Positions 1-41,877 of a stretch of 64,000 nucleotides of DNA are shown piece by piece (position 1 is the first letter of the stretch; every line of letters begins with the position of its first letter). The notes under the pieces were generated by a model, which worked only from the letters and a program-made list of their open reading frames with translations, ran no database searches and had not been told where the DNA came from. The position numbers and the translations under genes are program-made. The DNA lies in the IMG/VR virus record IMGVR_UViG_3300050821_002957, positions 310,001-374,000 of that record; one strand, 5' to 3'.

Positions 1-89
1 AGGGCTGCTACACCAAGCCCTATGTGGGAAATTCCCGCAAAGGCCGCAAAGTTTTTGTAGCAGAGAACTAGATGAACATTAGGTTGCAT
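1..89 (-). CDS. 5' part of a CDS running off the window edge (MQPNVHLVLCYKNFAAFAGISHIGLGVAA...)
   Basis: Open frame from ATG at 89 to the edge; GTAAATA late-promoter-like motif upstream at 180-186 (minus). Confidence 0.45.
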   Translation of the reverse strand, partial: MQPNVHLVLCYKNFAAFAGISHIGLGVAA

Positions 90-203
90 TGGATACCGTC
101 AAAGGATGAATTTTTCTCTCTGTCAGTAGTTAGCGTAGCATCGATTTTGGATTTGACAAGTCCGCTTACCACTGGAGACTATTTACACCCATCAACAGCT
201 TGA

Positions 204-446
204 TCATCCAATGTGAGCCGATACCACATTTCCGTTGACAACTTTAAAATTTATCCGAAAAGCGTTGTGGTCATTGTTGAGTGGTTGAAGCCCTGAATGT
301 TCAACTTTTACGATGAAACCTGCCTGCTGTGCTTTGCTTTGTGCTTCGTCGATTCTCATCCCGACATATTGTGAAACGTCCATAATTTTATACCTATTGT
401 GACTGACAGGCTTTCCGCCCCGAATTTTTGGTGTTAGGAAATCCAT
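204..446 (-). CDS. Small protein resembling potato-inhibitor-I / peptidase inhibitor I78 fold
   Basis: YVGMRIDEAQ...NDHNAFRINFKVVNGNVVSAHIG resembles the D.R..R.N....G.V..A..G C-terminal pattern. Confidence 0.5.
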   Translation of the reverse strand: MDFLTPKIRGGKPVSHNRYKIMDVSQYVGMRIDEAQSKAQQAGFIVKVEHSGLQPLNNDHNAFRINFKVVNGNVVSAHIG

Positions 447-748
447 TATTCCTCGTCGTTAATATCTAGCCAATCGGGAGCTTCCCAGGTTCGGTGAATA
501 ACTCTGACGTAGATTACACCTTCTTCTTCGTCAAGATTCCATTCAAGATCATCGCCAACTTCTATGTTCAATTCACGAACTAATCCATCTGGCAGTGTCA
601 TCATTCCGTTCGGTTGTATGACACAGGCATATGACCTATTACCAAATCCAGAGTTCACCCAGACACCTAAAATGGGTGGTTCATCATTATCTTCAGTCGG
701 CTCTTCGTCAAAGTCTTCCGGTTCTAGCTCTGCGTAATCTTCAGCCAT
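446..748 (-). CDS. AbrB/MazE-type DNA-binding domain protein with acidic N-terminus
   Basis: IQPNGMMTLPDGLVRELNIEVGDDLEW swapped-hairpin signature. Confidence 0.7.
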   Translation of the reverse strand: MAEDYAELEPEDFDEEPTEDNDEPPILGVWVNSGFGNRSYACVIQPNGMMTLPDGLVRELNIEVGDDLEWNLDEEEGVIYVRVIHRTWEAPDWLDINDEE

Positions 749-1872
749 TTTCTTCCTACCCGAATCACTGACATTTCTGGCAACGGTTCTTTGAGTCTTG
801 GATCGATAACTACACTACCATTTACATTTACGGCTCCGCTCTTCACCAGACGACTGCCCTCTGAGACCGAAGATGCCAAACCCATCAGCACCAAGACTCG
901 ATCCAGGCGTGTATTGACCGAATGAAAAACCGGAATTCTTACAACTGGAATATCGACCGGCGCTTCACGATCTGAAAATCTCTTTGTCCATTCAATTTCA
1001 GCGGTGTCTGCTTTTGGTTCGTCATGTAACCAATGAACAATTCGCCATGCCAAATATTTCTTAGATTGAAATGGTTGAGGATGCCAGCCACATTTATTTG
1101 GAAACAGAACCTCTTGCCATTGGCGCATTACATCATCAGCAATCGACATAACTTTGCTGAACATTTCAAATGGTTCATCCAGCAAACCAATGTGATTACC
1201 GAACGACTTGGACATCTTTCGACCGTCCGTACCAAACAACAAAGGAACCGTCGCAATAACCTGAGGTTTCTCACCACGATCATGCATGTACATCCGGCCC
1301 ATCAGCATGTTGTAAAATTGATCGTTGCCGCCAAGTTCAATATCTACACCTTCTCTGAAAGAGTCATATGCCTGAAGCATGGGGTATAACATCTCATGCA
1401 TAAAGACCGGAGTGTTTGTTACCTTGCGTTCTTTAAAATCGTCACGGCCACCGATTTGACTGAGGGTGAAATGGGACATGAGACGAATTACATCTTGCAT
1501 CTTCATCTCGTCAAACCATTCGGCATTCTTTTTGACGACGGTTTTGGTTCGATCCAAAATTTTGAAAGCCTGTGTCATATAGCTCCAGGCGTTCGTATTG
1601 ATTTCATCGTCAGAAAGCGCAGGCCGAAGCTGATTGCGCCCGGTCGGATCACCAATCGATGCTGTGGTGTTGCCGACGATCATCACAATGGTGTGCCCAG
1701 CATCCTGAAATTCACGCATCTTTTTCAACAGCACAGCATGACCAAGATGTAGGTCTGGTGCTGTGGGATCGAATCCGGCTTTCACACGTAACGGATGACC
1801 TGACGCAATAAGAGCATCAAACTCCTTTTCGTCGAGGAGTTGCGTAAACCCGGATTTGAGTGATTGTTGCAC
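724..1872 (-). CDS. tyrS: Tyrosyl-tRNA synthetase
   Basis: GFDPTAPDLHLGH (HIGH), YPMLQAYD, GGNDQ, KMSKS, C-terminal S4 domain. Confidence 0.96.
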   Translation of the reverse strand: MQQSLKSGFTQLLDEKEFDALIASGHPLRVKAGFDPTAPDLHLGHAVLLKKMREFQDAGHTIVMIVGNTTASIGDPTGRNQLRPALSDDEINTNAWSYMTQAFKILDRTKTVVKKNAEWFDEMKMQDVIRLMSHFTLSQIGGRDDFKERKVTNTPVFMHEMLYPMLQAYDSFREGVDIELGGNDQFYNMLMGRMYMHDRGEKPQVIATVPLLFGTDGRKMSKSFGNHIGLLDEPFEMFSKVMSIADDVMRQWQEVLFPNKCGWHPQPFQSKKYLAWRIVHWLHDEPKADTAEIEWTKRFSDREAPVDIPVVRIPVFHSVNTRLDRVLVLMGLASSVSEGSRLVKSGAVNVNGSVVIDPRLKEPLPEMSVIRVGRKWLKITQS

Positions 1873-1895
1873 CCAACTAGTTTAGCATATGAAAA

Positions 1896-2213
1896 TTAAT
1901 CGTCAACCACTTTACCGCCTCGGATCACTTGTGCATTGAACGTGACTTTGGCAGTTCCGGCGAAAGGACTCATTGGTTGCGGTCGGCCTTCAGAATCGGT
2001 AAAGACGGGAAGCTGCCGTACAACTTTTTCGGGGATATCAAGTGTCGTAAAAAGTTCGTCAAAAATTTTCTGGATGCCTTTGTTCAACTCTTCTCTGCTG
2101 GCACCGAAAATTTCTTTCTGAAATTTTCCTGGTAGGGCAACATTGGCGACGAATTCCTGGACACCATCTTTGATTCCATAGTCACTAAAACGAACAAGTA
2201 TCACTTCTCTCAT
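1896..2213 (-). CDS. Hypothetical protein
   Basis: Start moved to ATG 2213, 5 nt after the late-type CTAAATG motif and downstream of a terminator. Confidence 0.6.
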   Translation of the reverse strand: MREVILVRFSDYGIKDGVQEFVANVALPGKFQKEIFGASREELNKGIQKIFDELFTTLDIPEKVVRQLPVFTDSEGRPQPMSPFAGTAKVTFNAQVIRGGKVVDD

Positions 2214-2230
2214 AACTGCATTTAGACAAT

Positions 2231-2265
2231 AAAAAAAGGAGCAGATCCTAAGACCCACTCCCTTT
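2231..2265 (-). terminator. Rho-independent terminator after the C1 peptidase
   Basis: Minus strand GGAGTGGGTC-TTAG-GATCTGCTCC-TTTTTT. Confidence 0.8.
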
Positions 2266-2293
2266 CTAGACATAAGACTGAACAAAAACTATT

Positions 2294-3088
2294 TTAGGCG
2301 ACCTGAGTGATCTGCCAGAAATCGTCTGCAAGATTTCCATCAAGCAAGTACTCGAACGGCATGTAGAAGTAACCCTTTGCGCCCCAGAAAGGACCCCAGG
2401 AATTACGGACGATGAAAGTACGAGGCGGTGCGCCATTGACTGTCGTGTTGGTTGCATTGTAGCCGACAACCAATACAGCATGTCCACCCAATAGATTTTC
2501 AGAAGCAGCAGGCATCGGAACAATTCCGGTTGCTGCTACTTGTGCGCTTTCAAAAGAATCATAGACGCTGAATCCGATCACGAACGGGAAACCCGATGCG
2601 AGGCAGGACTGCATTGCGTTCAATTCTTGTGGAACACTTGCGTATTGAATGGCCTTGCTCTTCAAAGCAGTCGTATAGCAAGAGGCCGGTGGCTTCTCAG
2701 TGAACTTTGAAGTGTTATAAGGCCATGTTGCTTCCGGTGGGACTCCCCAGGTTGCTACGGCTTTGATGCCATCGCTAAGAGTTGCGCCGGAATCCGAAGA
2801 TACAGTGCCTTCTTCGACACGCTCATTGTAATAAATGAACAGGCGAGATGGCATGAAAATCGGAAGTTTCAATTTAATCTGATCGTATTCAATTGCGCCT
2901 GCGATAGCATTTGCAGTGCATGATCCGAGTTGCTGCTGGTTGTAACAGGCAGGACATCCTGAACGCATGTCTACGAAAGTAGCGATCTTTTCAGGTGCAA
3001 TCCGTGCTGCGAAGATTCTTTTGCGATGGTCAGGAAGAGACGGCTTCCAGCCATATTTCTTGCCGAGTGGAGAGAGTTTGTTGCTCAT
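2294..3088 (-). CDS. Papain-family (C1) cysteine peptidase
   Basis: QQQLGSCTANA (catalytic Cys), GGHAVLVVGY (His), IVRNSWG (Asn); start ATG 3088 lies 5 nt after CTAAATA. Confidence 0.92.
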   Translation of the reverse strand: MSNKLSPLGKKYGWKPSLPDHRKRIFAARIAPEKIATFVDMRSGCPACYNQQQLGSCTANAIAGAIEYDQIKLKLPIFMPSRLFIYYNERVEEGTVSSDSGATLSDGIKAVATWGVPPEATWPYNTSKFTEKPPASCYTTALKSKAIQYASVPQELNAMQSCLASGFPFVIGFSVYDSFESAQVAATGIVPMPAASENLLGGHAVLVVGYNATNTTVNGAPPRTFIVRNSWGPFWGAKGYFYMPFEYLLDGNLADDFWQITQVA

Positions 3089-3124
3089 GCTGCTATTTAG
3101 CAGCATAGAAATCGTTGTCAACTA

Positions 3125-3505
3125 TCAACAACAACCCACCCCACGATGATCATAACAATAGTCTTCCGGTTTTGGATTTAAAATATCATCCAAAACTGCC
3201 CAGGCCATCGCCACTCGGAACCAACAATGTTCGGCACCGATAATTTCCATGCTCTCAAATAGCGGCGGCGAGTCCAGACGAAAAGTAATCGCCACTCGGA
3301 CAGGAACAAAGAAACGTCTTTTGTCAACCCCAAGTTCCGTTGCCAAATCCATCAAAGTTTTCTTGATGGTCTCGGTCGTGAAATCATCTTTGATGGATAA
3401 GAGCGCATTTTTGGTTCGCTCCAACACCAAAACAGATTCTTGGATTGTTCCTTTTTTGGCCGGGATCAACAACAACGGATCGTATTCTTTCAGACCGGCG
3501 CTCAT
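3125..3505 (-). CDS. Stand-alone glutamyl-tRNA synthetase-type anticodon-binding domain
   Basis: LATELGVDKRRFFVPVRVAITFRLDSPPLFESMEIIG matches the GluRS C-terminal P.R.A.TG...SP.L.....LG helical domain; no catalytic domain. Confidence 0.75.
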   Translation of the reverse strand: MSAGLKEYDPLLLIPAKKGTIQESVLVLERTKNALLSIKDDFTTETIKKTLMDLATELGVDKRRFFVPVRVAITFRLDSPPLFESMEIIGAEHCWFRVAMAWAVLDDILNPKPEDYCYDHRGVGCC

Positions 3506-4083
3506 AATACCAGCTTTCGTTCGATTTCTGCCGCCATACGAAGATCAGTAATTCGCACAATCGGCAACACCCAATTCTGTGTTTCAAGTTTGTACTTGTT
3601 CCGGCGAGCTTCTTCCCACTTGCTCAAATCGGTCACGTTGTCAATCCGGTCACAACCTTTGATGCGGCGAGGACGAGCATCGGCGTGTGTCAACGTCATA
3701 TAATATTCATCGTCGGGCCGTTTTGCACGAGCTACCAATTCGCCTGTAATTGGATTGAACGACGGCAATTCTTTGGACAATACGATAATATCTTCGTACA
3801 TTTCTTGCCCGAACAGATTCACTATTACCGAAGTTGGAACATAACAATCTTCGACGATATCATGCCCAAGTCCCAACGCTACATGCATAGCGTCGGCGTA
3901 ACCATAAGTCATCGCAACGTCGAATGCAACACGGCGAACGTGCTCAAAATACCGTTCACCAGTCAGACGGCGGCTCTGCTTACGATGCGCTTCCTTGACC
4001 AACCAATACATGCGCTGGACATACGACAGTTCATCAGCATTCAAATACTCAGCCATCGTATTGAAAAATTCTTTACGGTTCAT
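3502..4083 (-). CDS. HD-domain (p)ppGpp hydrolase-like protein (small alarmone hydrolase, Mesh1/SpoT-HD)
   Basis: AHRKQSRRLTGERYFEH, GHDIVED, IKGCDRIDN. Confidence 0.88.
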   Translation of the reverse strand: MNRKEFFNTMAEYLNADELSYVQRMYWLVKEAHRKQSRRLTGERYFEHVRRVAFDVAMTYGYADAMHVALGLGHDIVEDCYVPTSVIVNLFGQEMYEDIIVLSKELPSFNPITGELVARAKRPDDEYYMTLTHADARPRRIKGCDRIDNVTDLSKWEEARRNKYKLETQNWVLPIVRITDLRMAAEIERKLVL

Positions 4084-4090
4084 GATTTTT

Positions 4091-4120
4091 ACGCTATCAC
4101 AGTAGATACATCGTTGTCAA
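4091..4120 (-). promoter_or_regulatory. Sigma70-type promoter, leaderless, with TAGATACATC box in spacer
   Basis: TTGACA-N18-TAGCGT, ATG 7 nt downstream. Confidence 0.6.
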
Positions 4121-4308
4121 TTCTGGGTAGATGTCATGGAGATTCGCTGTGGCTTGAATCGCCAACAATGACGCCATGCAAAATGAGCCATACCAGCATG
4201 ACCACACCGAGCACATTTCGTTCTCCAATGCTTTCCTGAGACCCCACGAATAACCCACCAGAGATCGTGATACCAGCGATGTACCGAAACTTTATGTGGT
4301 TCGCTCAT
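4117..4308 (-). CDS. Hypothetical small protein (CxxC)
   Basis: ORF in co-oriented gene run. Confidence 0.5.
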   Translation of the reverse strand: MSEPHKVSVHRWYHDLWWVIRGVSGKHWRTKCARCGHAGMAHFAWRHCWRFKPQRISMTSTQN

Positions 4309-4392
4309 TGTAATCCTAAAGCCTTTCTCATTGCGAATTGTGTTTGCAAGACGCCAGCCTCTTCGCCAACCTCTAATGCATTGGTGAGTAAA

Positions 4393-4725
4393 TCAATGAG
4401 CGTATTTCTGTTGATACATCCACTCAACCAAATCTTGTCGTTGAGTGATTTCTGGATACATCCACTCAACCAAAGCAAGAGCCGATGCTACAGTTCTAAG
4501 CTCGACATCAGTCATCAACAGGCGATACCCATTCAACCGTTTCCCACTTTCAAGATCCATCACCAGATATTGCATTTTGGATGCTAACGATATACCCGGC
4601 TCTTCCCGGTCCAGATTTTCTATCCACGGTTTATCGTCTTTAGTCGTGTTGAAAATGATGTCACCTGCCAACCGAAGAATATCAGCCATCTGGTTTTTCA
4701 CATGTGCCGAAACTGCATGTAACAT
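4393..4725 (-). CDS. Hypothetical protein
   Basis: ATG 4725 directly follows the stop of an upstream small ORF. Confidence 0.55.
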   Translation of the reverse strand: MLHAVSAHVKNQMADILRLAGDIIFNTTKDDKPWIENLDREEPGISLASKMQYLVMDLESGKRLNGYRLLMTDVELRTVASALALVEWMYPEITQRQDLVEWMYQQKYAH

Positions 4726-4726
4726 C

Positions 4727-4891
4727 CTAATTTTCCTCGTTATTAAAAATTTGAATTGCCGTAGCGTACTTACGGAACGACAATGAACCACAAGACGAAA
4801 ATCGCATCGAGACGGTAGCAATCTGTTCAGGACCCTCTTCGAGGAAATTATCCAGATCGGACATTGACGTAAAATCGATCATGAAAGTCAT
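4727..4891 (-). CDS. Hypothetical 54-aa protein (MTFMIDFTSMSDLDNFLEEG...)
   Basis: Read by hand; ATGA overlap with upstream stop; below ORF-track cutoff. Confidence 0.5.
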   Translation of the reverse strand: MTFMIDFTSMSDLDNFLEEGPEQIATVSMRFSSCGSLSFRKYATAIQIFNNEEN

Positions 4892-5111
4892 CCCTTGATC
4901 CATTTCTTCAGCAACGAATCCGGCAGCGGTTTTTCACCACGAAGCTGCTGTAAATACTGGACGAACACTCCGTCAACCGCCTTGGCATTATTCACATCAG
5001 GAATCTTCAATTCCTTTTTTGCATGAAGGCGAGAAAATGATAAATCCCCTGAAGTTGACCAAACTCACCGTTCGTCATTTCAATGGTCTTCAAAGTCTTG
5101 GTCCGTGGCAT
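4888..5111 (-). pseudogene. Small gene broken by a 1-nt frameshift at an A6 run (or sequencing error)
   Basis: MPRTKTLK...FMQK then KELKIPDVNN...KWIKG* in the -1 frame; both ends overlap neighbouring stop/start codons. Confidence 0.5.
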
Positions 5112-5377
5112 CACGCCTCTGCTTTCAGGGCCTTCTCTAAGCGTTCAATCACCGCTTCCTCTTTAGAGGCATGTTTTCCGATGAGCGCACCATGTTTGAT
5201 GCCGAGCAGACAGGTTTCGACGATGCTGACATGCCGACGCTTGGCCGATTGGGAAGACGATTTCTTGCTGAGAACTTCGACGGCATTCGCAGCATGAATA
5301 TCAGCAAGATAAACGGCGAGATTTTTCCAATTGTCCAATTCGATCTTCAGATCTAGAATCTCGTTCTCAGTCATCAT
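5111..5377 (-). CDS. Hypothetical protein
   Basis: ORF in co-oriented gene run. Confidence 0.6.
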   Translation of the reverse strand: MMTENEILDLKIELDNWKNLAVYLADIHAANAVEVLSKKSSSQSAKRRHVSIVETCLLGIKHGALIGKHASKEEAVIERLEKALKAEA

Positions 5378-5379
5378 GA

Positions 5380-5679
5380 TTATGCTCCGATCTCGATGGT
5401 GGGCATTTCCATTCCGGCAGCAAAGCCATGCCGAGTATAAAATGACTTGATAGGGATCATTGCCGTTTTAAAGGACTTTTCAGTACCGTCACCGTTCTGA
5501 ATGAAATGCATCAGCTTTTTCGCAGATCGAATGGGAGCATTCCAATACGCCCAACCATCACTGCAAAGATTGACTTGATCACGAAAATCGGAGAGGAATT
5601 TAGCCGCTTGATAAGTGGGTGTGTCTGGACGATATTTACGAACAGCACTATCGATTTCGTTTTCATTCATGTAGTTCAT
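5380..5679 (-). CDS. Hypothetical protein (early)
   Basis: Directly behind a strong sigma70-type promoter. Confidence 0.7.
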   Translation of the reverse strand: MNYMNENEIDSAVRKYRPDTPTYQAAKFLSDFRDQVNLCSDGWAYWNAPIRSAKKLMHFIQNGDGTEKSFKTAMIPIKSFYTRHGFAAGMEMPTIEIGA

Positions 5680-5685
5680 AAGAAG

Positions 5686-5729
5686 ATTCTATCAAATGGA
5701 TGGTGTCATGTCAAGAGAAGATGTATCTT
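5686..5729 (-). promoter_or_regulatory. Sigma70-type leaderless promoter with upstream AAGATGTATCTT box
   Basis: TTGACA-N17-TAGAAT, ATG 6 nt downstream. Confidence 0.75.
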
Positions 5730-5880
5730 TTTTTAGAAACGCCAAAAATGAACTGGAATTGGCGTTTCGGCAATGAAAGTTTCGACTGCATTTTTAACAG
5801 CAAGAAGTGTTTCTTGGTCATGTGGCTCTGGAGAAAGCCAGTATTCACGAATGATTTCACGTATCAGGTTTCATAGTACC

Positions 5881-5921
5881 ATATTACCAGAACCTAAATT
5901 CATTGTCAATAGATGTAACTA
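5881..5921 (-). promoter_or_regulatory. Sigma70-type leaderless promoter with TAGATGTAACTA box
   Basis: TTGACA-N17-TAATAT, ATG (5874) 6 nt downstream. Confidence 0.65.
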
Positions 5922-6227
5922 ATTTCTATGTTCGTCGAAAAACAATTTTTGACTGATTATTGGCATAAGCTTTTCAAGGGCAACAGGAGAAATTCTATCA
6001 ATGAGATCATATTCTGTGCCGACGAGAGCGCCAAATTCGACTTCATAACTCTCGTAACCGCTTAAGTATCTAATGTATACGTAATCCACCTTCGGTGACT
6101 TCGTAACTCGAAAACGAACACCATCACCCATTGAAACAGGTGTCTGAGCACCCCACATTTTAAAAATTGTATTATTACGGGGATTCGTGATGAAATCTTC
6201 AATTGAACTAGTAAACTTTGTCTTCAT
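5919..6227 (-). CDS. Hypothetical protein
   Basis: ATG 6227 preceded by AAGGA; upstream part of the track ORF looks non-coding and structured. Confidence 0.65.
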   Translation of the reverse strand: MKTKFTSSIEDFITNPRNNTIFKMWGAQTPVSMGDGVRFRVTKSPKVDYVYIRYLSGYESYEVEFGALVGTEYDLIDRISPVALEKLMPIISQKLFFDEHRN

Positions 6228-6436: not shown

Positions 6437-6916
6437 TCAAGCAACCCTGTAATCCGTGGTATTTGCACCTTTTCCACCGGAACCATTACAAGGTTTGCAA
6501 AGTGGCTGAATGTTGCTGATAAACCCGGTCCCACCTTTGATGATAGGAATAACGTGGTCGGCCTCAAGAGCCTCATCTAGCTCTGATTCATGTCGTCCAC
6601 AACATAAACATCGATGGTCGTATTGAATTTTAAGTTCTCGCCATTCCTTTGCTGTGAAGCTGCCGCCATTTTGTTCTTCACGCAACCTCCGCTTATTTCG
6701 CTCTGCTACGAGTGCTGCATGAATAACGTGTTTATTCTTAGGATCATCCCAATAACGTTTTTGTGATTGCCGGATTTTGATCCGATTGTTCGTATAATAT
6801 TTTCTCGAAAATTTCTTTCCATTCAACTGGAAGTACTCTTTATAGCAGGTCACACAATTTCCGCTGACCGGCCAATTTTCGTGGTCCGGGTTTTCTTTTG
6901 AAAGATTTAGCACCAC
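6437..6916 (-). mobile_element. HNH homing-endonuclease-like gene
   Basis: RCLCCG...LEADHVIPIIKGG...NIQPLCKPCN. Confidence 0.85.
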
Positions 6917-38962: not shown

Positions 38963-40186
38963 ATGAATCTACAAAATCCCAAATTGGTTGACAAAATCCA
39001 CAAGACACCAACGAAAGTAGTTCTTTTCGTAACAGGTGGTGGTCTGGAAATTTTCCAAACCTTGACTCATCGTGGCGGCGGCTCGGCTACGCTCCTGTCC
39101 GGGCTGATTCCGTATGACACTCAAGAGACCATCGAATTGCTTGGTGGAGTCCCAGAAAAACTGGTCAGTGAGAAAACTACACGAGAGATGGCAATGGTGG
39201 CCTTCCAGCGTGCTCTGAAGCTCTCAAAAGGCGAATACCCAGTCATAGGCGTGGCGGCGTCGGCAGTGCTTCAGAAGACGCCGTATGAGCGTGAAGGTCG
39301 AAAGCATTTTGTCTATGCTGCACTCCAGACCGACACTAAGACGGTTTCCTGTGTTCTGGACCTACATGATGGTATTGCAGAACCAAAAGACACCGGACCA
39401 ATTCCACCGGATCATGGTGTAGGATTGCGAATCATGGAAGAAATGATCACAGCCAATTTGATTCTGAATTTGATTGCCGAAGGTTGTGGACTGGAAGAAC
39501 GAATTACTCTTGGTTATGGTGTCGAAGACGATCTGACCCGGCGTGAATCGACCTTGACCGGAATTTCGATCAACAAAATCATGAGTGGTCATCCAGTTTC
39601 GTTCGACTTGGGCAAAGACACCAAAAAAATTGAAACCGCCACATTCAGTTCGACTAGTTACCGAAACATTTTCCCAGGTCGATTCAATCCGATCCATGCT
39701 GATCATTGGGAGATGTGCGCTCTCGCCTGCGAACAATTTGGTTTCGTCGAATTTGAAATCTCCATTGGCAATGTCGAAAAACCCACATTGGATTTGATTT
39801 CTCTCGAAGAGACGCTGAAGCAATTCTGCCAAGAAAGAACGCCACCATTGCCAGTTTACTTCAGAGTGTGGGTGACCAATGCTCCCACTTTTGTCCAGAA
39901 AGCCGACATGTTTCCGGGCGCAACGTTCATTGTTGGCTATGACACAGCAAAACGTATTTGCGACCCAAAGTATGCCGGAAACATCGAAGAAGTAATGGAA
40001 GTGTTCAAAAAAAATGACGTTGATTTCCTGGTGTTCGGACGTGAACTGAATGGAGTCTATAAAGCTGATGTTAGTGAATTTCCGACTTCGTTTCGACAGA
40101 TTGTTGTTACGAATACTGAGCCACGTCAGTACTCAAATATCTCTTCTTCAGAGATCCGTCGCCGCACGTCAGAAGGGCATGAATGA
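38963..40186 (+). CDS. CinA/PncC-like domain fused to a NadD-type (NMN/NaMN) adenylyltransferase domain
   Basis: N: VTGGG...GGSATLL...PY...VSEKTTREMA; C: FPGRFNPIHADH, F.VGYDTA.R, ISSSEIR. Confidence 0.78.
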   Translation: MNLQNPKLVDKIHKTPTKVVLFVTGGGLEIFQTLTHRGGGSATLLSGLIPYDTQETIELLGGVPEKLVSEKTTREMAMVAFQRALKLSKGEYPVIGVAASAVLQKTPYEREGRKHFVYAALQTDTKTVSCVLDLHDGIAEPKDTGPIPPDHGVGLRIMEEMITANLILNLIAEGCGLEERITLGYGVEDDLTRRESTLTGISINKIMSGHPVSFDLGKDTKKIETATFSSTSYRNIFPGRFNPIHADHWEMCALACEQFGFVEFEISIGNVEKPTLDLISLEETLKQFCQERTPPLPVYFRVWVTNAPTFVQKADMFPGATFIVGYDTAKRICDPKYAGNIEEVMEVFKKNDVDFLVFGRELNGVYKADVSEFPTSFRQIVVTNTEPRQYSNISSSEIRRRTSEGHE

Positions 40187-40352
40187 GCTAAAGGCTTTGA
40201 TGTACGTCTACCGAAAGGAATGGAAAGCCTGTCGGTTAAAAGTTAAGGCAACAAATCGGCAAATGGTTTTGCTGAAGCATAAGTTGAGAAAAGAAATGTT
40301 CAGACAGAAAAGAATTCAGAATAGAATGGAGAGAAGACAAAATGCCAGCTAA
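40179..40352 (+). CDS. Small basic protein
   Basis: Overlaps both neighbours. Confidence 0.5.
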   Translation: MNELKALMYVYRKEWKACRLKVKATNRQMVLLKHKLRKEMFRQKRIQNRMERRQNAS

Positions 40353-41877
40353 CACAGCATGGAGAATGCAAAACGGACTTGATGGCTTCAAGTATCCTCG
40401 TGGTTCGAGTGAGCGCATGATGCCGAAGCGCACGGACGGCTACAAACCTTCGCACTGGATGTTCGAGGAAGACGGCGTGACCGAGTGTTATGACTACCTC
40501 ACCAGCCGTGGCGGTATGTTTCAAGACCTGACGATGTTTGGAGCACAGTCCATCGTCATGAAGTACTTCTTGGGATGTGTCGTAACCCCGGAACAAGTTC
40601 GACGTGCTCGCAAATTTTATAAGAGTTATTACGGCATGGACGGCGTGTTCAACTACGAAGCGTGGATGGACATTGCGACTCGTCTCGAAGGTCGCTTGCC
40701 TCTAGAATTCTGGGCGCTGCCTGAAGGCATGAGCGGCATTCCAGTTCAGACGCCGATGATGGCCTACGTCAACACCGATCCGAAGCACGCCCATCTGTCT
40801 GGCTACGTCGAGCCGCTGACGTTCAAGGTGTGGAATACAATCACCGTGGCGTCGTTGTCACAGCACATCAAGAAAATCATCTATCAGTTCCTCGTCGAGA
40901 CCGGCACGCCCGAAGACATCATTTGGAAGCTGCATGACTTCGGTTACCGTGGTGTTTCGAGCGAAGAGTCCGCTGAATTTGCTGGGGCCGCACACCTTCT
41001 GAATTTCTGGGGCAGCGACACCATTCCGGCTATCGATCACATCAACGAATTTTACTCGGATGGTGTGTTCGACGAAGATGGTGACCCTACCTACATGCCT
41101 GCCTTCAGCGTCCGTGCCACAGAGCACAGCATCATGACGCAGAATGGCCGCAATGGTGAGTCGGCCATCGTTAAGCGTATCCTTCAAAAGTGCCCGAATG
41201 GGATCATCGCAATGGTCGGCGATAGCTACAACATCTTCGACTTCTCCAGCAAGATCATCGGAACTGAATTCCACACCGAAGTGATCGAGCGTGAAGGTAT
41301 TGTTGTGATTCGCCCGGACAGCGGTGAACCGATTCCGACGATGATGAAAGTGATGTGGGAACTCGGCGAAAAATTCGGCAAGACGGTCAATGACAAGGGC
41401 TACTACAATCTCGGCACAGGCAAGGGTCTGGGCAAGATCAAGGTGCTTCAGGGCGACAAGAACGACTACGATGCTGTCTATAACATGCTCCGTGCCTTCA
41501 AGGGCGCTCAGTGGTCGGCGGATAACATTGCAGCCTTCGGCATGGGTGGCGCACTGTTGCAGGCCAGCACTCGTGATACTCAGAAGATGGCCGTCAAGCT
41601 CTCTTCGCAGACTCGTAATGGCGTCTGGGAAGATATCTTCAAAGATCCGATCACCGATCCTGGCAAGGGTTCCAAGTATGGTCGCTTCGCTGTGACATAC
41701 GAAGAGAATGCTGGTGTACGTCGTATGGTGACCAGTCGTCTGACTCAGAATGGTTCGATTCCGAATGGCAATCTGATGCGGATGATTTCTCGCAACGGTT
41801 ACCTCGCCGTCCATGACAAATTTGAAACGGCTCGTGCTCGTGCGGATGAGTGGATGCCGAAATCCAAAGCAGCTTAA
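40342..41877 (+). CDS. nadV: Nicotinamide phosphoribosyltransferase (NAMPT/NadV family)
   Basis: TDGYKPSH, LHDFGYRGVSS, AAHLLNF.GSDT, ATEHS, VIRPDSG, LQGD, FGMGGALLQ, KDPITDPGK.SK.GR. Confidence 0.93.
   Translation: MPANTAWRMQNGLDGFKYPRGSSERMMPKRTDGYKPSHWMFEEDGVTECYDYLTSRGGMFQDLTMFGAQSIVMKYFLGCVVTPEQVRRARKFYKSYYGMDGVFNYEAWMDIATRLEGRLPLEFWALPEGMSGIPVQTPMMAYVNTDPKHAHLSGYVEPLTFKVWNTITVASLSQHIKKIIYQFLVETGTPEDIIWKLHDFGYRGVSSEESAEFAGAAHLLNFWGSDTIPAIDHINEFYSDGVFDEDGDPTYMPAFSVRATEHSIMTQNGRNGESAIVKRILQKCPNGIIAMVGDSYNIFDFSSKIIGTEFHTEVIEREGIVVIRPDSGEPIPTMMKVMWELGEKFGKTVNDKGYYNLGTGKGLGKIKVLQGDKNDYDAVYNMLRAFKGAQWSADNIAAFGMGGALLQASTRDTQKMAVKLSSQTRNGVWEDIFKDPITDPGKGSKYGRFAVTYEENAGVRRMVTSRLTQNGSIPNGNLMRMISRNGYLAVHDKFETARARADEWMPKSKAA

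What the first reader, a model, noticed from the sequence alone, without database searches (positions are those of the whole stretch)
724..4083. Translation/stringent-response cluster: stand-alone GluRS anticodon-binding domain coupled to an alarmone hydrolase, near TyrRS
A 126-aa protein consisting only of the GluRS-type anticodon-binding domain is ATGA-coupled behind a (p)ppGpp-hydrolase-type HD gene with an early promoter, and a full TyrRS lies about 1.3 kb downstream. Inference: the isolated domain could shield tRNA anticodons from anticodon nucleases, sequester tRNA, or act as a decoy. The HD enzyme could remove (p)ppGpp/(p)ppApp or reverse toxSAS pyrophosphorylation of tRNA CCA ends (CapRel-like defence).
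Basis: partly seen in the sequence, partly recalled or inferred. Interest (0 to 1): 0.7.

Follow-up and report, generated by a model that had tools for sequence, protein, structure and literature searches.

The report
Stand-alone GluRS anticodon subdomain in jumbo phage
A 405-kb soil jumbo phage carries a small gene made from only the last part of a bacterial glutamyl-tRNA synthetase; it sits just after an alarmone-hydrolase gene, but related phages lack it, so it is a one-lineage insertion of unproven function and not part of a conserved system.

Summary
On the minus strand, a 193-aa RelA/SpoT-type HD hydrolase (3502..4083) overlaps by ATGA a 126-aa ORF (3125..3505). That ORF matches only the C-terminal part of bacterial GluRS. 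A complete TyrRS (724..1872) lies 1.25 kb further on. The window belongs to a 405,631-bp phage with 44 tRNAs, a tmRNA and a CCA-adding enzyme, but no GluRS catalytic domain and no alarmone synthetase.

Two corrections matter. First, the ORF holds only subdomain V of the anticodon-binding domain. It keeps the pocket for anticodon bases 34/35 (R70, L82, F83). It lacks subdomain IV, which carries the base-36 discriminator. Second, five related contigs (HD 65-79% identical) share the order HD, C1 peptidase, small ORF, TyrRS, with a MazE-like gene following where the contig extends that far. In all five, HD abuts the peptidase. The GluRS piece is therefore a clean insertion of about 390 nt found only in this lineage, and not a decayed gltX. 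No protein more than 50% identical exists in 15 billion proteins.

A second soil run confirms the junctions. Most likely this is a captured gltX 3' fragment expressed as a free-standing tRNA-anticodon-loop binder. A functionless fragment remains a strong rival. The shield or decoy role and teamwork with the HD enzyme are unsupported.

The parts
4091..4120 (-). Sigma-70-like promoter element upstream of the HD gene: TTGACA (4120..4115), 18 nt, TG-extended TAGCGT (4096..4091). The ATG lies 7 nt further on and there is no Shine-Dalgarno sequence.
   Evidence: Read from the sequence. Nearly the same element precedes the 79%-identical HD gene in L015. The standard scan did not call it. Function not tested.
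3502..4083 (-). Orphan small alarmone hydrolase (RelA/SpoT-type HD domain only), 193 aa.
   Evidence: Pfam HD_4 E 1.3e-7; phrog_990 E 3.3e-15. PDB Rel/SpoT hydrolase domains E 1e-8, with RxxGExYxxH, HDxxED and DRxxN aligned. These residues are invariant or nearly so in 40 homologues. No RelA_SpoT synthetase domain in the genome.
3125..3505 (-). 126-aa free-standing GluRS subdomain V (distal half of the alpha-helical anticodon-binding domain) plus a low-confidence Cys-rich tail (about residues 110-126). Its start codon overlaps the HD stop codon (ATGA, 3505..3502).
   Evidence: Pfam Anticodon_2 positions 46-138 of 141, E 7e-15. PDB GluRS C-termini. AlphaFold2 model with alignment: pLDDT 90, five helices. 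Foldseek top 40 hits are all bacterial GluRS, TM by query up to 0.72.
3117..3505 (-). Approximate extent of the lineage-specific insertion compared with related phages.
   Evidence: DNA alignment with L015 and L012 shows one clean gap between the HD stop codon and the conserved element ahead of the peptidase gene. Gene tables of five relatives show HD followed directly by Peptidase_C1.
3087..3121 (-). Conserved element ahead of the peptidase gene: TTGACA (3121..3116), 16 nt, then CTAAATA (3100..3094) in the loop of a hairpin (arms 3106..3100 and 3093..3087). The peptidase ATG (3088) lies in the 3' arm.
   Evidence: conserved in L015, L016, L012; modest covariation. The CTAAATA-N5-ATG motif is enriched genome-wide.
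2294..3088 (-). Papain-family (C1) cysteine peptidase, 264 aa from the ATG at 3088.
   Evidence: Pfam Peptidase_C1 E 2.6e-15. The start was fixed by comparison with relatives' N-termini. GSC, GGH and NSW motifs are seen in the translation.
2232..2267 (-). Terminator-like hairpin followed by a T run, after the peptidase gene.
   Evidence: 16 pairs; sequence.
1896..2213 (-). Conserved small ORF of unknown function: about 105 aa from the ATG at 2213 (129 aa if read from the TTG at 2285).
   Evidence: No family match. A 110-129-aa gene holds this position in relatives. CTAAAT lies 6 nt before the ATG.
724..1872 (-). Complete tyrosyl-tRNA synthetase, 382 aa, with HLGH, KMSKS and a C-terminal S4 domain. 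It has its own promoter-like TTGACG-16-TAAACT that ends 6 nt before the GTG start.
   Evidence: Pfam tRNA-synt_1b E 1.4e-55 and S4. TIGR00234 tyrS 286 bits against a cut-off of 114. Promoter-like site. The phage also has tRNA-Tyr.
446..748 (-). Acidic (pI 4.05) 100-aa protein with a MazE/AbrB-type domain. It overlaps the TyrRS 3' end and is conserved in the module.
   Evidence: Pfam MazE_antitoxin E 1.6e-5; the same position in relatives; pI.

Best explanation
The 126-aa ORF is a real gene found only in this lineage. It was built from the 3'-terminal third of a bacterial-type gltX, that is, subdomain V of the alpha-helical anticodon-binding domain.

The fragment landed in the short spacer between an orphan small alarmone hydrolase gene and a C1 peptidase gene. 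Those genes belong to a module (HD, C1 peptidase, small ORF, TyrRS, MazE-like) that related soil jumbo phages share. The ORF has no promoter-like or Shine-Dalgarno element of its own. It is probably translated by termination-reinitiation at the ATGA overlap from the HD transcript.

The product folds like GluRS subdomain V and keeps the residues that hold anticodon bases 34 and 35. It has lost subdomain IV, which discriminates base 36. It most likely acts alone as a low-specificity binder of anticodon loops with pyrimidine-34 and U35: tRNA-Glu, tRNA-Gln and perhaps tRNA-Lys. This would make it one more translation-related accessory gene in a phage that already carries 44 tRNAs, a tmRNA, TyrRS and a CCA-adding enzyme.

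The HD enzyme works independently. It would hydrolyse (p)ppGpp or (p)ppApp, or possibly 3'-pyrophosphorylated tRNA, to keep host translation running.

Shown: gene structure, domain identity, fold, the insertion, and absence from relatives. Inferred: tRNA binding, its specificity, the mode of translation, and every physiological role. The confidence given is for the whole statement. The structural and evolutionary part alone I put at about 0.9, and tRNA binding at about 0.4-0.5.
For: - Domain identity and fold.
- Pocket residues: the ungapped HMMER stretch, query 34-101 against T. thermophilus GluRS 399-466, places R70, L82 and F83 on Arg435, Leu447 and Phe448. PMC12088422 describes these as the arginine that stacks on U35 and bonds C34, and part of the base-34 pocket floor. 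R70 and L82 are invariant and F83 is 97% conserved in 70 GluRS pieces.
- Normal conservation: 19 of 25 columns conserved at 70% or more are retained. Mean identity to GluRS pieces is 35.7%, against 39.7% (sd 2.8) among those pieces. 7-14% of true GluRS sequences deviate as much.
- Missing discriminator: Arg358 of subdomain IV reads base 36 (PMC2978374, PMC12088422), and that subdomain is absent here.
- Gene integrity: the frame is intact. GC is 0.457 and GC3 0.48, against 0.462 for the genome.
- Insertion into a conserved module.
- Real DNA.
- Other free-standing Anticodon_2 genes with unrelated neighbours exist. P0099 is a 111-aa complete gene. P0127 has a foreign N-terminus and sits beside a phage-type macrodomain gene. 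An ESM Atlas cluster of 118-aa proteins has phage (Uroviricota) members.
- Translation-rich genome.
- HD catalytic set.
- Phage small alarmone hydrolases are known to neutralise toxSAS toxins (PMC9712102; 10.1101/2021.04.30.441581).
Against: - Only one sequence exists, so purifying selection cannot be measured.
- Relatives do without the gene.
- Two nearly invariant GluRS positions are changed: R52 to M and G75 to F.
- Subdomain V alone supplies only part of the GluRS-tRNA interface, so affinity may be low.
- The C-terminal tail is unconserved and poorly modelled.
- The donor is unknown.
- No expression data: no RNA run holds the sequence.
Confidence: 0.45

Rival explanations
1. The ORF is a functionless captured fragment. 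A piece of a gltX 3' end entered the HD-peptidase spacer by illegitimate recombination. It stays open only by chance, or because it is short and harmless. Its ATGA 'coupling' merely reflects where it landed.
For: - Absent from all five relatives examined.
- No protein more than 50% identical among 15 billion.
- It holds only part of a domain pair.
- GluRS homology starts at residue 7. The first six codons may be made from local spacer sequence, since a CTGAAAG stretch is shared with the spacer in L015.
- The last roughly 20 residues are unconserved and low-confidence, as expected from read-through into non-coding donor sequence.
- R52M and G75F fall at positions conserved at 93-97%.
Against: - The 381-nt frame is intact.
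- Conservation is within the normal range for GluRS subdomain V.
- Base composition equals the phage's. This argues against a fresh capture from a typical high-GC soil bacterium.
- The sequence is identical in two separate soil samples.
- Other phage-like contigs carry free-standing versions acquired independently.
Confidence: 0.33
2. HD and the GluRS subdomain form a two-subunit enzyme. The anticodon binder guides the hydrolase to tRNA, for example to remove the 3'-pyrophosphate added by CapRel-type toxSAS defences.
For: - The two genes are adjacent and overlap in ATGA, which favours equimolar synthesis.
- Some small alarmone hydrolases restore aminoacylation of pyrophosphorylated tRNA (10.1101/2021.04.30.441581).
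- A phage hydrolase neutralises toxSAS toxins (PMC9712102).
Against: - Orthologous HD genes at 65-79% identity have no such partner.
- From general knowledge of tRNA structure, the anticodon loop and the CCA end lie about 70 Angstroms apart. That distance is hard for two small globular proteins to span on a single tRNA.
- Other free-standing Anticodon_2 genes are not next to HD genes.
Confidence: 0.07
3. The protein acts on proteins, not on tRNA. It would mimic the GluRS C-terminus, either as a decoy for a host factor or defence toxin that recognises GluRS, or to disturb host GluRS function.
For: - The fold is an accurate copy of a surface-exposed GluRS module.
- Charge changes at conserved positions (E48K, R52M, K61D) could signal a new binding surface.
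Against: - No partner is known.
- The best-kept residues are those of the tRNA pocket.
- No direct evidence of any kind.
Confidence: 0.1

Closest known systems
Bacterial glutamyl-tRNA synthetase (gltX), anticodon-binding subdomain V
   Same: Homologous by sequence (Pfam Anticodon_2, TIGR00464 positions 388-463) and by fold (Foldseek hits are GluRS only, rmsd 1.0-2.4 Angstroms). The arginine and Leu-Phe pair of the base-34/35 pocket and the SPPLFE motif are kept.
   Different: No catalytic domain, no subdomain IV (no Arg358 equivalent) and no other GluRS part anywhere in the phage. It adds a Cys-rich tail. R52M and G75F change nearly invariant positions. It cannot charge tRNA.
Free-standing paralogues of aaRS or amidotransferase tRNA-binding domains: the YqeY protein (paralogue of the GatB tail, also appended to Deinococcus GlnRS; PMC1865053), and from my own knowledge Trbp111. 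YadB/Glu-Q-RS is the converse GluRS truncation (PMC9437257).
   Same: The same principle: a single domain of the tRNA-charging machinery encoded as a separate small protein. YadB shows that GluRS can be split functionally between its catalytic and anticodon parts.
   Different: The domain is different and not homologous to YqeY or Trbp111. [quoted passage not shown] The review PMC9437257 lists only YadB as a GluRS-derived paralogue.
Phage-encoded small alarmone hydrolases, for example PaSpo of Salmonella phage SSU5 (PMC9712102; PMC7229694)
   Same: The HD gene is a single-domain RelA/SpoT-type hydrolase of about 190 aa in a phage, with a full catalytic motif set and no synthetase domain.
   Different: Only 22-33% identical to HD genes of catalogued phages. 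It belongs to its own clade of about 40 metagenomic sequences. Substrate untested. No toxSAS partner.
Translation-gene repertoires of huge phages (PMC7162821)
   Same: A genome above 400 kb with dozens of tRNAs, a tmRNA, an aminoacyl-tRNA synthetase and tRNA-maturation enzymes.
   Different: That work does not describe a stand-alone anticodon-binding subdomain, as far as I could find.

Membership tests
Glutamyl-tRNA synthetase (gltX, TIGR00464) | Class I catalytic domain (Pfam tRNA-synt_1c) with HIGH and KMSKS motifs | tested here: not met
   The 126-aa ORF has no such region. PF00749 has no match anywhere in the 405-kb genome, while 14 of 14 control genomes match. The TIGR00464 score is 25.8 against a cut-off of 290.
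Glutamyl-tRNA synthetase (gltX, TIGR00464) | Complete anticodon-binding domain (subdomains IV and V), including the position-36 reader | tested here: not met
   Only Pfam positions 46-138 of 141 are present. The alignment to T. thermophilus GluRS starts near residue 366-399, so the Arg358 region is absent.
Pfam Anticodon_2 (PF19269) domain | Score above the gathering threshold | tested here: met
   56.1 bits against 23.6, E 7e-15; 55.6 bits in the six-frame genome search.
Pfam Anticodon_2 (PF19269) domain | Alpha-helical fold of GluRS subdomain V | tested here: met
   AlphaFold2 model with pLDDT 90. The Foldseek top 40 are all bacterial GluRS, with TM by query of 0.45-0.72.
Pfam Anticodon_2 (PF19269) domain | Binds the tRNA anticodon loop | not testable with these tools
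   Only residue conservation is available (R70, L82, F83).
Small alarmone hydrolase (RelA/SpoT homologue, hydrolase only) | Single HD domain of the RelA/SpoT type, without a synthetase domain | tested here: met
   Pfam HD_4 over residues 28-170 of 193. TIGR00691 matches only positions 4-144. No PF04607 match in the genome.
Small alarmone hydrolase (RelA/SpoT homologue, hydrolase only) | Catalytic motifs RxxGExYxxH, HDxxED and DRxxN | tested here: met
   Aligned to Rel/SpoT structures. Invariant or at least 90% conserved in 40 homologues.
Small alarmone hydrolase (RelA/SpoT homologue, hydrolase only) | Hydrolyses (p)ppGpp, (p)ppApp or tRNA 3'-pyrophosphate | not testable with these tools
   Needs an enzyme assay.
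toxSAS-hydrolase toxin-antitoxin module | Adjacent toxic small alarmone synthetase gene | tested here: not met
   No RelA_SpoT synthetase domain in the whole phage. The neighbours are the GluRS subdomain and a C1 peptidase.
Tyrosyl-tRNA synthetase (tyrS, TIGR00234) | Equivalog score, HIGH and KMSKS motifs, C-terminal S4 domain | tested here: met
   285.9 bits against a cut-off of 113.8. HLGH and KMSKS are in the translation. S4 E 6.5e-8.

The most novel reading that the evidence does not exclude
The free-standing subdomain V is a new kind of phage counter-defence protein derived from an aaRS. It would cap the anticodon loops of pyrimidine-34/U35 tRNAs (Glu, Gln, Lys), the class that several anticodon nucleases attack, and so protect them during infection. 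Having lost the position-36 reader, one protein could cover all three tRNA families.
Probability: 0.1. Interest if true: 0.8.

Novelty: new variant of a known kind. Interest (0 to 1): 0.38.

Why it matters
If the protein binds tRNA, it would be the first free-standing GluRS anticodon-binding subdomain. It would also show a phage turning a fragment of a host synthetase into a trans-acting tRNA binder. That bears on how huge phages control or protect the host tRNA pool, and on how new small genes arise from captured fragments.

As things stand it is one gene in one uncultured phage lineage, with no evidence of function. The more solid result is the conserved module of alarmone hydrolase, C1 peptidase, small ORF, TyrRS and MazE-like gene in a clade of soil jumbo phages.

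Tried and rejected
- Nucleotide search of 1..6000 against catalogued phages: no match.
- tblastn of the 126-aa protein against catalogued phages: two hits. Both are full-length GluRS genes on unverified, bacterial-looking records: a high-GC contig end, and a 487-aa gene in a 'Staphylococcus phage' record flagged UNVERIFIED_ORG. Neither is a phage homologue.
- IMG/VR scans with the 126-aa protein, HD and TyrRS: no close relatives. The scan with alignment A1 found only a full-length GluRS at a prophage contig end and a short high-GC fragment.
- Species-genome scan: no close donor. Relatives cannot be drawn for a virus record. Metagenome loci cannot be used as handles. The donor therefore remains unknown. 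The length filter of the word-based search and the 50% clustering of the exhaustive search could both hide a closer full-length GluRS.
- Exhaustive phmmer search: 488 hits. Nearly all short ones are C-terminal GluRS fragments from short contigs. P0002, P0003 and P0102 are long repeat proteins that match residues 29-67 many times, which I judged spurious.
- Short Anticodon_2 genes on long contigs (P0010, P0135, P0198) are frameshift-split gltX genes next to their catalytic halves. They are not free-standing genes.
- A huge-phage HD homologue (LR745208.1) has no anticodon-domain gene after it.
- The single-sequence structure model was poor (pLDDT 57.5) and was replaced by the alignment-based model.
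- Complex prediction of HD with the 126-aa protein: no verdict (score 0.03 against a mark of 0.32). This is not evidence either way.
- I considered a -1 frameshift at CGA-AAG that would fuse HD to the ORF, whose frame is open for 13 codons upstream. There is no classical slippery heptamer, so I did not pursue it.

Full report
**Setting**

The window is bases 310,001-374,000 of a 405,631-bp virus record that CheckV rates as complete. The genome has 46% GC, 44 tRNA genes and a tmRNA. These include tRNA-Glu (CTC, TTC), tRNA-Gln (CTG, TTG), tRNA-Lys and tRNA-Tyr. It also encodes a CCA-adding enzyme.

The window holds T4-type replication genes: UvsW, a Rad50-like ATPase, family B polymerase, a RecA/UvsX-like protein and a DnaB-type helicase. 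It also holds NAMPT and a cytidylyltransferase-like (possible NMNAT) gene. This is a jumbo myovirus-like phage of the translation-gene-rich kind described for huge phages (PMC7162821). Two soil metagenome runs hold the region.

**Checking the observation**

All the genes lie on the minus strand.

- **HD gene, 3502..4083, 193 aa.** It matches Pfam HD_4 and phrog_990 and the hydrolase domains of Rel/SpoT proteins in the PDB (E 1e-8). RxxGExYxxH, HDxxED and DRxxN are aligned. These residues are invariant or nearly so in 40 homologues.
- **GluRS-like ORF, 3125..3505, 126 aa.** Its ATG overlaps the HD stop codon as ATGA. It matches Pfam Anticodon_2 (E 7e-15), the C-terminus of TIGR00464 gltX, and GluRS C-termini in the PDB.
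- **TyrRS, 724..1872.** It is complete, passing the equivalog cut-off and carrying HLGH, KMSKS and an S4 domain.
- **Assembly.** A contig from a second, independent soil sample spans 2718..3919 with no differences, so the arrangement is real DNA.

**What the 126-aa protein is**

The Pfam match covers model positions 46-138 of 141, and GluRS homology begins at residue 7.

The HMMER stretch against T. thermophilus GluRS is ungapped, with query 34-101 against chain 399-466. On that register residue 1 corresponds to about Tt366. The protein is therefore subdomain V only. [quoted passage not shown]

A single-sequence model was poor. With a 71-row alignment, AlphaFold2 gave pLDDT 90 and a five-helix bundle, with a low-confidence tail after about residue 110. 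The Foldseek top 40 PDB hits are all bacterial GluRS, with TM by query up to 0.72 and rmsd 1.0-2.4 Angstroms.

On the same register, R70, L82 and F83 fall on Arg435, Leu447 and Phe448. PMC12088422 describes a highly conserved arginine that stacks on U35 and bonds C34; by the alignment given there and the offset, I place it at Tt435. The same paper describes Leu447 and Phe448 as part of the floor of the base-34 pocket. R70 and L82 are invariant, and F83 is 97% conserved.

Arg358 discriminates base 36 and so separates tRNA-Glu (YUC) from tRNA-Gln (YUG) (PMC2978374). It lies in subdomain IV and is absent here.

Overall the sequence is ordinary for the family.

- 19 of 25 columns conserved at 70% or more are kept.
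- Mean identity to GluRS pieces is 35.7%, against 39.7% (sd 2.8) among the pieces themselves.
- 7-14% of true GluRS sequences deviate as much at conserved columns.
- The notable changes are R52M and G75F, at positions conserved at 93-97%.

The phage has no GluRS catalytic domain anywhere, so this is not one half of a split enzyme.

**Relatives and origin**

No close copy of the 126-aa protein exists.

- The word-based search of 5.8 billion clusters found only the protein itself.
- The exhaustive search of 1.84 billion representatives gave nothing better than E 1e-9 and 46% identity.
- IMG/VR and species-genome scans found nothing close.

The HD protein, in contrast, has about 40 homologues at 49-79% identity. 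I read the gene neighbourhoods of five distinct related contigs: P0152 at 79%, P0153 at 74%, P0157 at 69% (three contigs) and P0159 at 65% (a 370-kb contig).

All five show HD followed after 8-40 nt by a C1 peptidase gene. Next comes a 110-129-aa ORF and then TyrRS. A MazE-like gene and further shared genes follow on the two contigs that extend that far.

A DNA alignment shows a single clean gap of about 390 nt in the relatives. It lies exactly between the HD stop codon and a conserved element ahead of the peptidase gene.

The GluRS piece is therefore an insertion into a conserved module. It is not a remnant of a gltX that once stood here, and the conserved neighbour of HD is the peptidase.

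A more distant homologue (57%, on a 375-kb contig) has a different neighbourhood. A huge-phage HD gene from the catalogued collection has no such neighbour either.

The ORF's base composition equals the phage's. That argues against a fresh capture from a high-GC soil bacterium. The donor could not be identified with the searches available.

**Transcription context**

- **HD.** It is preceded by TTGACA, 18 nt, then a TG-extended TAGCGT, with the ATG 7 nt further on. The closest relative conserves this element.
- **The 126-aa ORF.** It has no such element and no Shine-Dalgarno sequence. Expression probably depends on reinitiation at the ATGA overlap.
- **The peptidase.** It has its own TTGACA-16-TAAATA element and is followed by a terminator-like hairpin.
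- **TyrRS.** It has its own promoter-like site ending 6 nt before its start codon.

The 'cluster' is therefore several transcription units, conserved in order but not a single operon.

**Are free-standing versions known?**

Most short Anticodon_2 proteins in the databases are contig-end fragments of GluRS. Others are frameshift-split genes lying next to their catalytic halves. Three leads look genuine.

- **P0099.** A complete 111-aa gene in a tightly packed contig with no catalytic half.
- **P0127.** 237 aa, with a foreign N-terminal region fused to nearly the whole anticodon-binding domain. It sits beside a macrodomain gene of a phage family.
- **An ESM Atlas cluster.** 118-aa Anticodon_2 proteins, some from Uroviricota.

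P0099 and P0127 are no closer to the window's protein than ordinary GluRS is (37-38% identity), and their neighbours are unrelated to HD. That pattern suggests repeated independent captures that work, if at all, without an HD partner.

A review of aaRS-derived paralogues lists only YadB/Glu-Q-RS for GluRS (PMC9437257). YadB is the converse truncation, lacking the anticodon-binding domain.

**Mechanism**

My best reading is a captured gltX 3' fragment that is expressed and folds as subdomain V. It would bind anticodon loops through the retained base-34/35 pocket, with relaxed specificity because the base-36 reader is gone. What that binding achieves (shielding, sequestration or tuning of charging) is open.

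The HD enzyme is an orphan small alarmone hydrolase. Such enzymes, including one from a Salmonella phage, neutralise toxSAS toxins. Some of them restore pyrophosphorylated tRNA (PMC9712102; 10.1101/2021.04.30.441581).

No synthetase partner is present, so the HD gene is not a toxin-antitoxin module. A role in keeping alarmone levels low, or in countering host toxSAS defences, is a reasonable inference only.

The strongest rival is that the ORF is a neutral captured fragment. It is a singleton, its ends look improvised, and two near-invariant positions have changed.

A guided two-subunit hydrolase is unlikely, because orthologous HD genes lack the partner and because of tRNA geometry.

**Verdict**

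The functional pairing is not supported by comparative evidence. The item is a rare, possibly new variant of the known theme of free-standing aaRS-derived domains, found in a single uncultured phage lineage. Interest is moderate to low until tRNA binding is shown.

Noticed in passing
Whole genome G000; in the window at 3100..3094 (-), 2225..2220 (-), and others such as 25657 and 51494 (-): The motif CTAAATA occurs 79 times. In 40 cases an ATG or GTG follows at a fixed 5-nt distance and opens an ORF of at least 60 codons; control hexamers give 1-9%. It resembles the T4 late promoter TATAAATA and implies leaderless or near-leaderless mRNAs. Many other genes have a TAnnAT-like hexamer 5-8 nt before the ATG, and few have a Shine-Dalgarno sequence.
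   Followed up: partly
window 3087..3106 (-); L015 about 1015-1040; L016 about 5380-5405; L012 about 6585-6610: A conserved hairpin has CTAAATA in its loop and the C1 peptidase start codon in its 3' arm. It is kept in four related phages, with some compensatory changes (2 of 10 pairs). It could be a translational or transcriptional control element.
   Followed up: partly
window 446..4083 (-) and loci L012, L015, L016, L018: The module of small alarmone hydrolase, papain-like C1 peptidase, small unknown ORF, TyrRS and acidic MazE/AbrB-like protein (pI 4.05) is conserved across a clade of soil jumbo phages. In L012 the peptidase is 622 aa instead of about 262. The reason for this linkage is unknown.
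   Followed up: partly
G000:C1 183192-183533; tRNAs at 3.6-9.5 kb, 106-140 kb and 184-296 kb; CCA-adding enzyme about 282461-283700 (-): The phage encodes a tmRNA (tag ANAPAFAFAAAA), 44 tRNAs covering all 20 amino acids (tRNA-Phe not found), and a 416-421-aa tRNA nucleotidyltransferase. It has no RtcB and no class IIa synthetase core.
   Followed up: partly
window 38963..41877 (+): A cytidylyltransferase-like (possible NMNAT) gene and a NAMPT gene lie side by side. This is an NAD salvage pair of the kind some phages carry.
   Followed up: no
window 6437..6916 (-): A 159-aa HNH-type nuclease, with a weak match to the IscB HNH region, sits at the switch between the minus-strand and plus-strand gene blocks.
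   Followed up: no
L006 153..1358: A groundwater contig encodes a 237-aa protein with an unknown N-terminal region fused to an almost complete GluRS anticodon-binding domain. A macrodomain (Appr-1-p processing) gene of a phage family follows it directly. This is another case of a phage-like element reusing this domain.
   Followed up: partly
window 4117..4308 (-): A small Cys/His-rich ORF (63 aa, with a CxxC...H...HC pattern) lies just upstream of the HD promoter. Its DNA appears conserved in L012.
   Followed up: no
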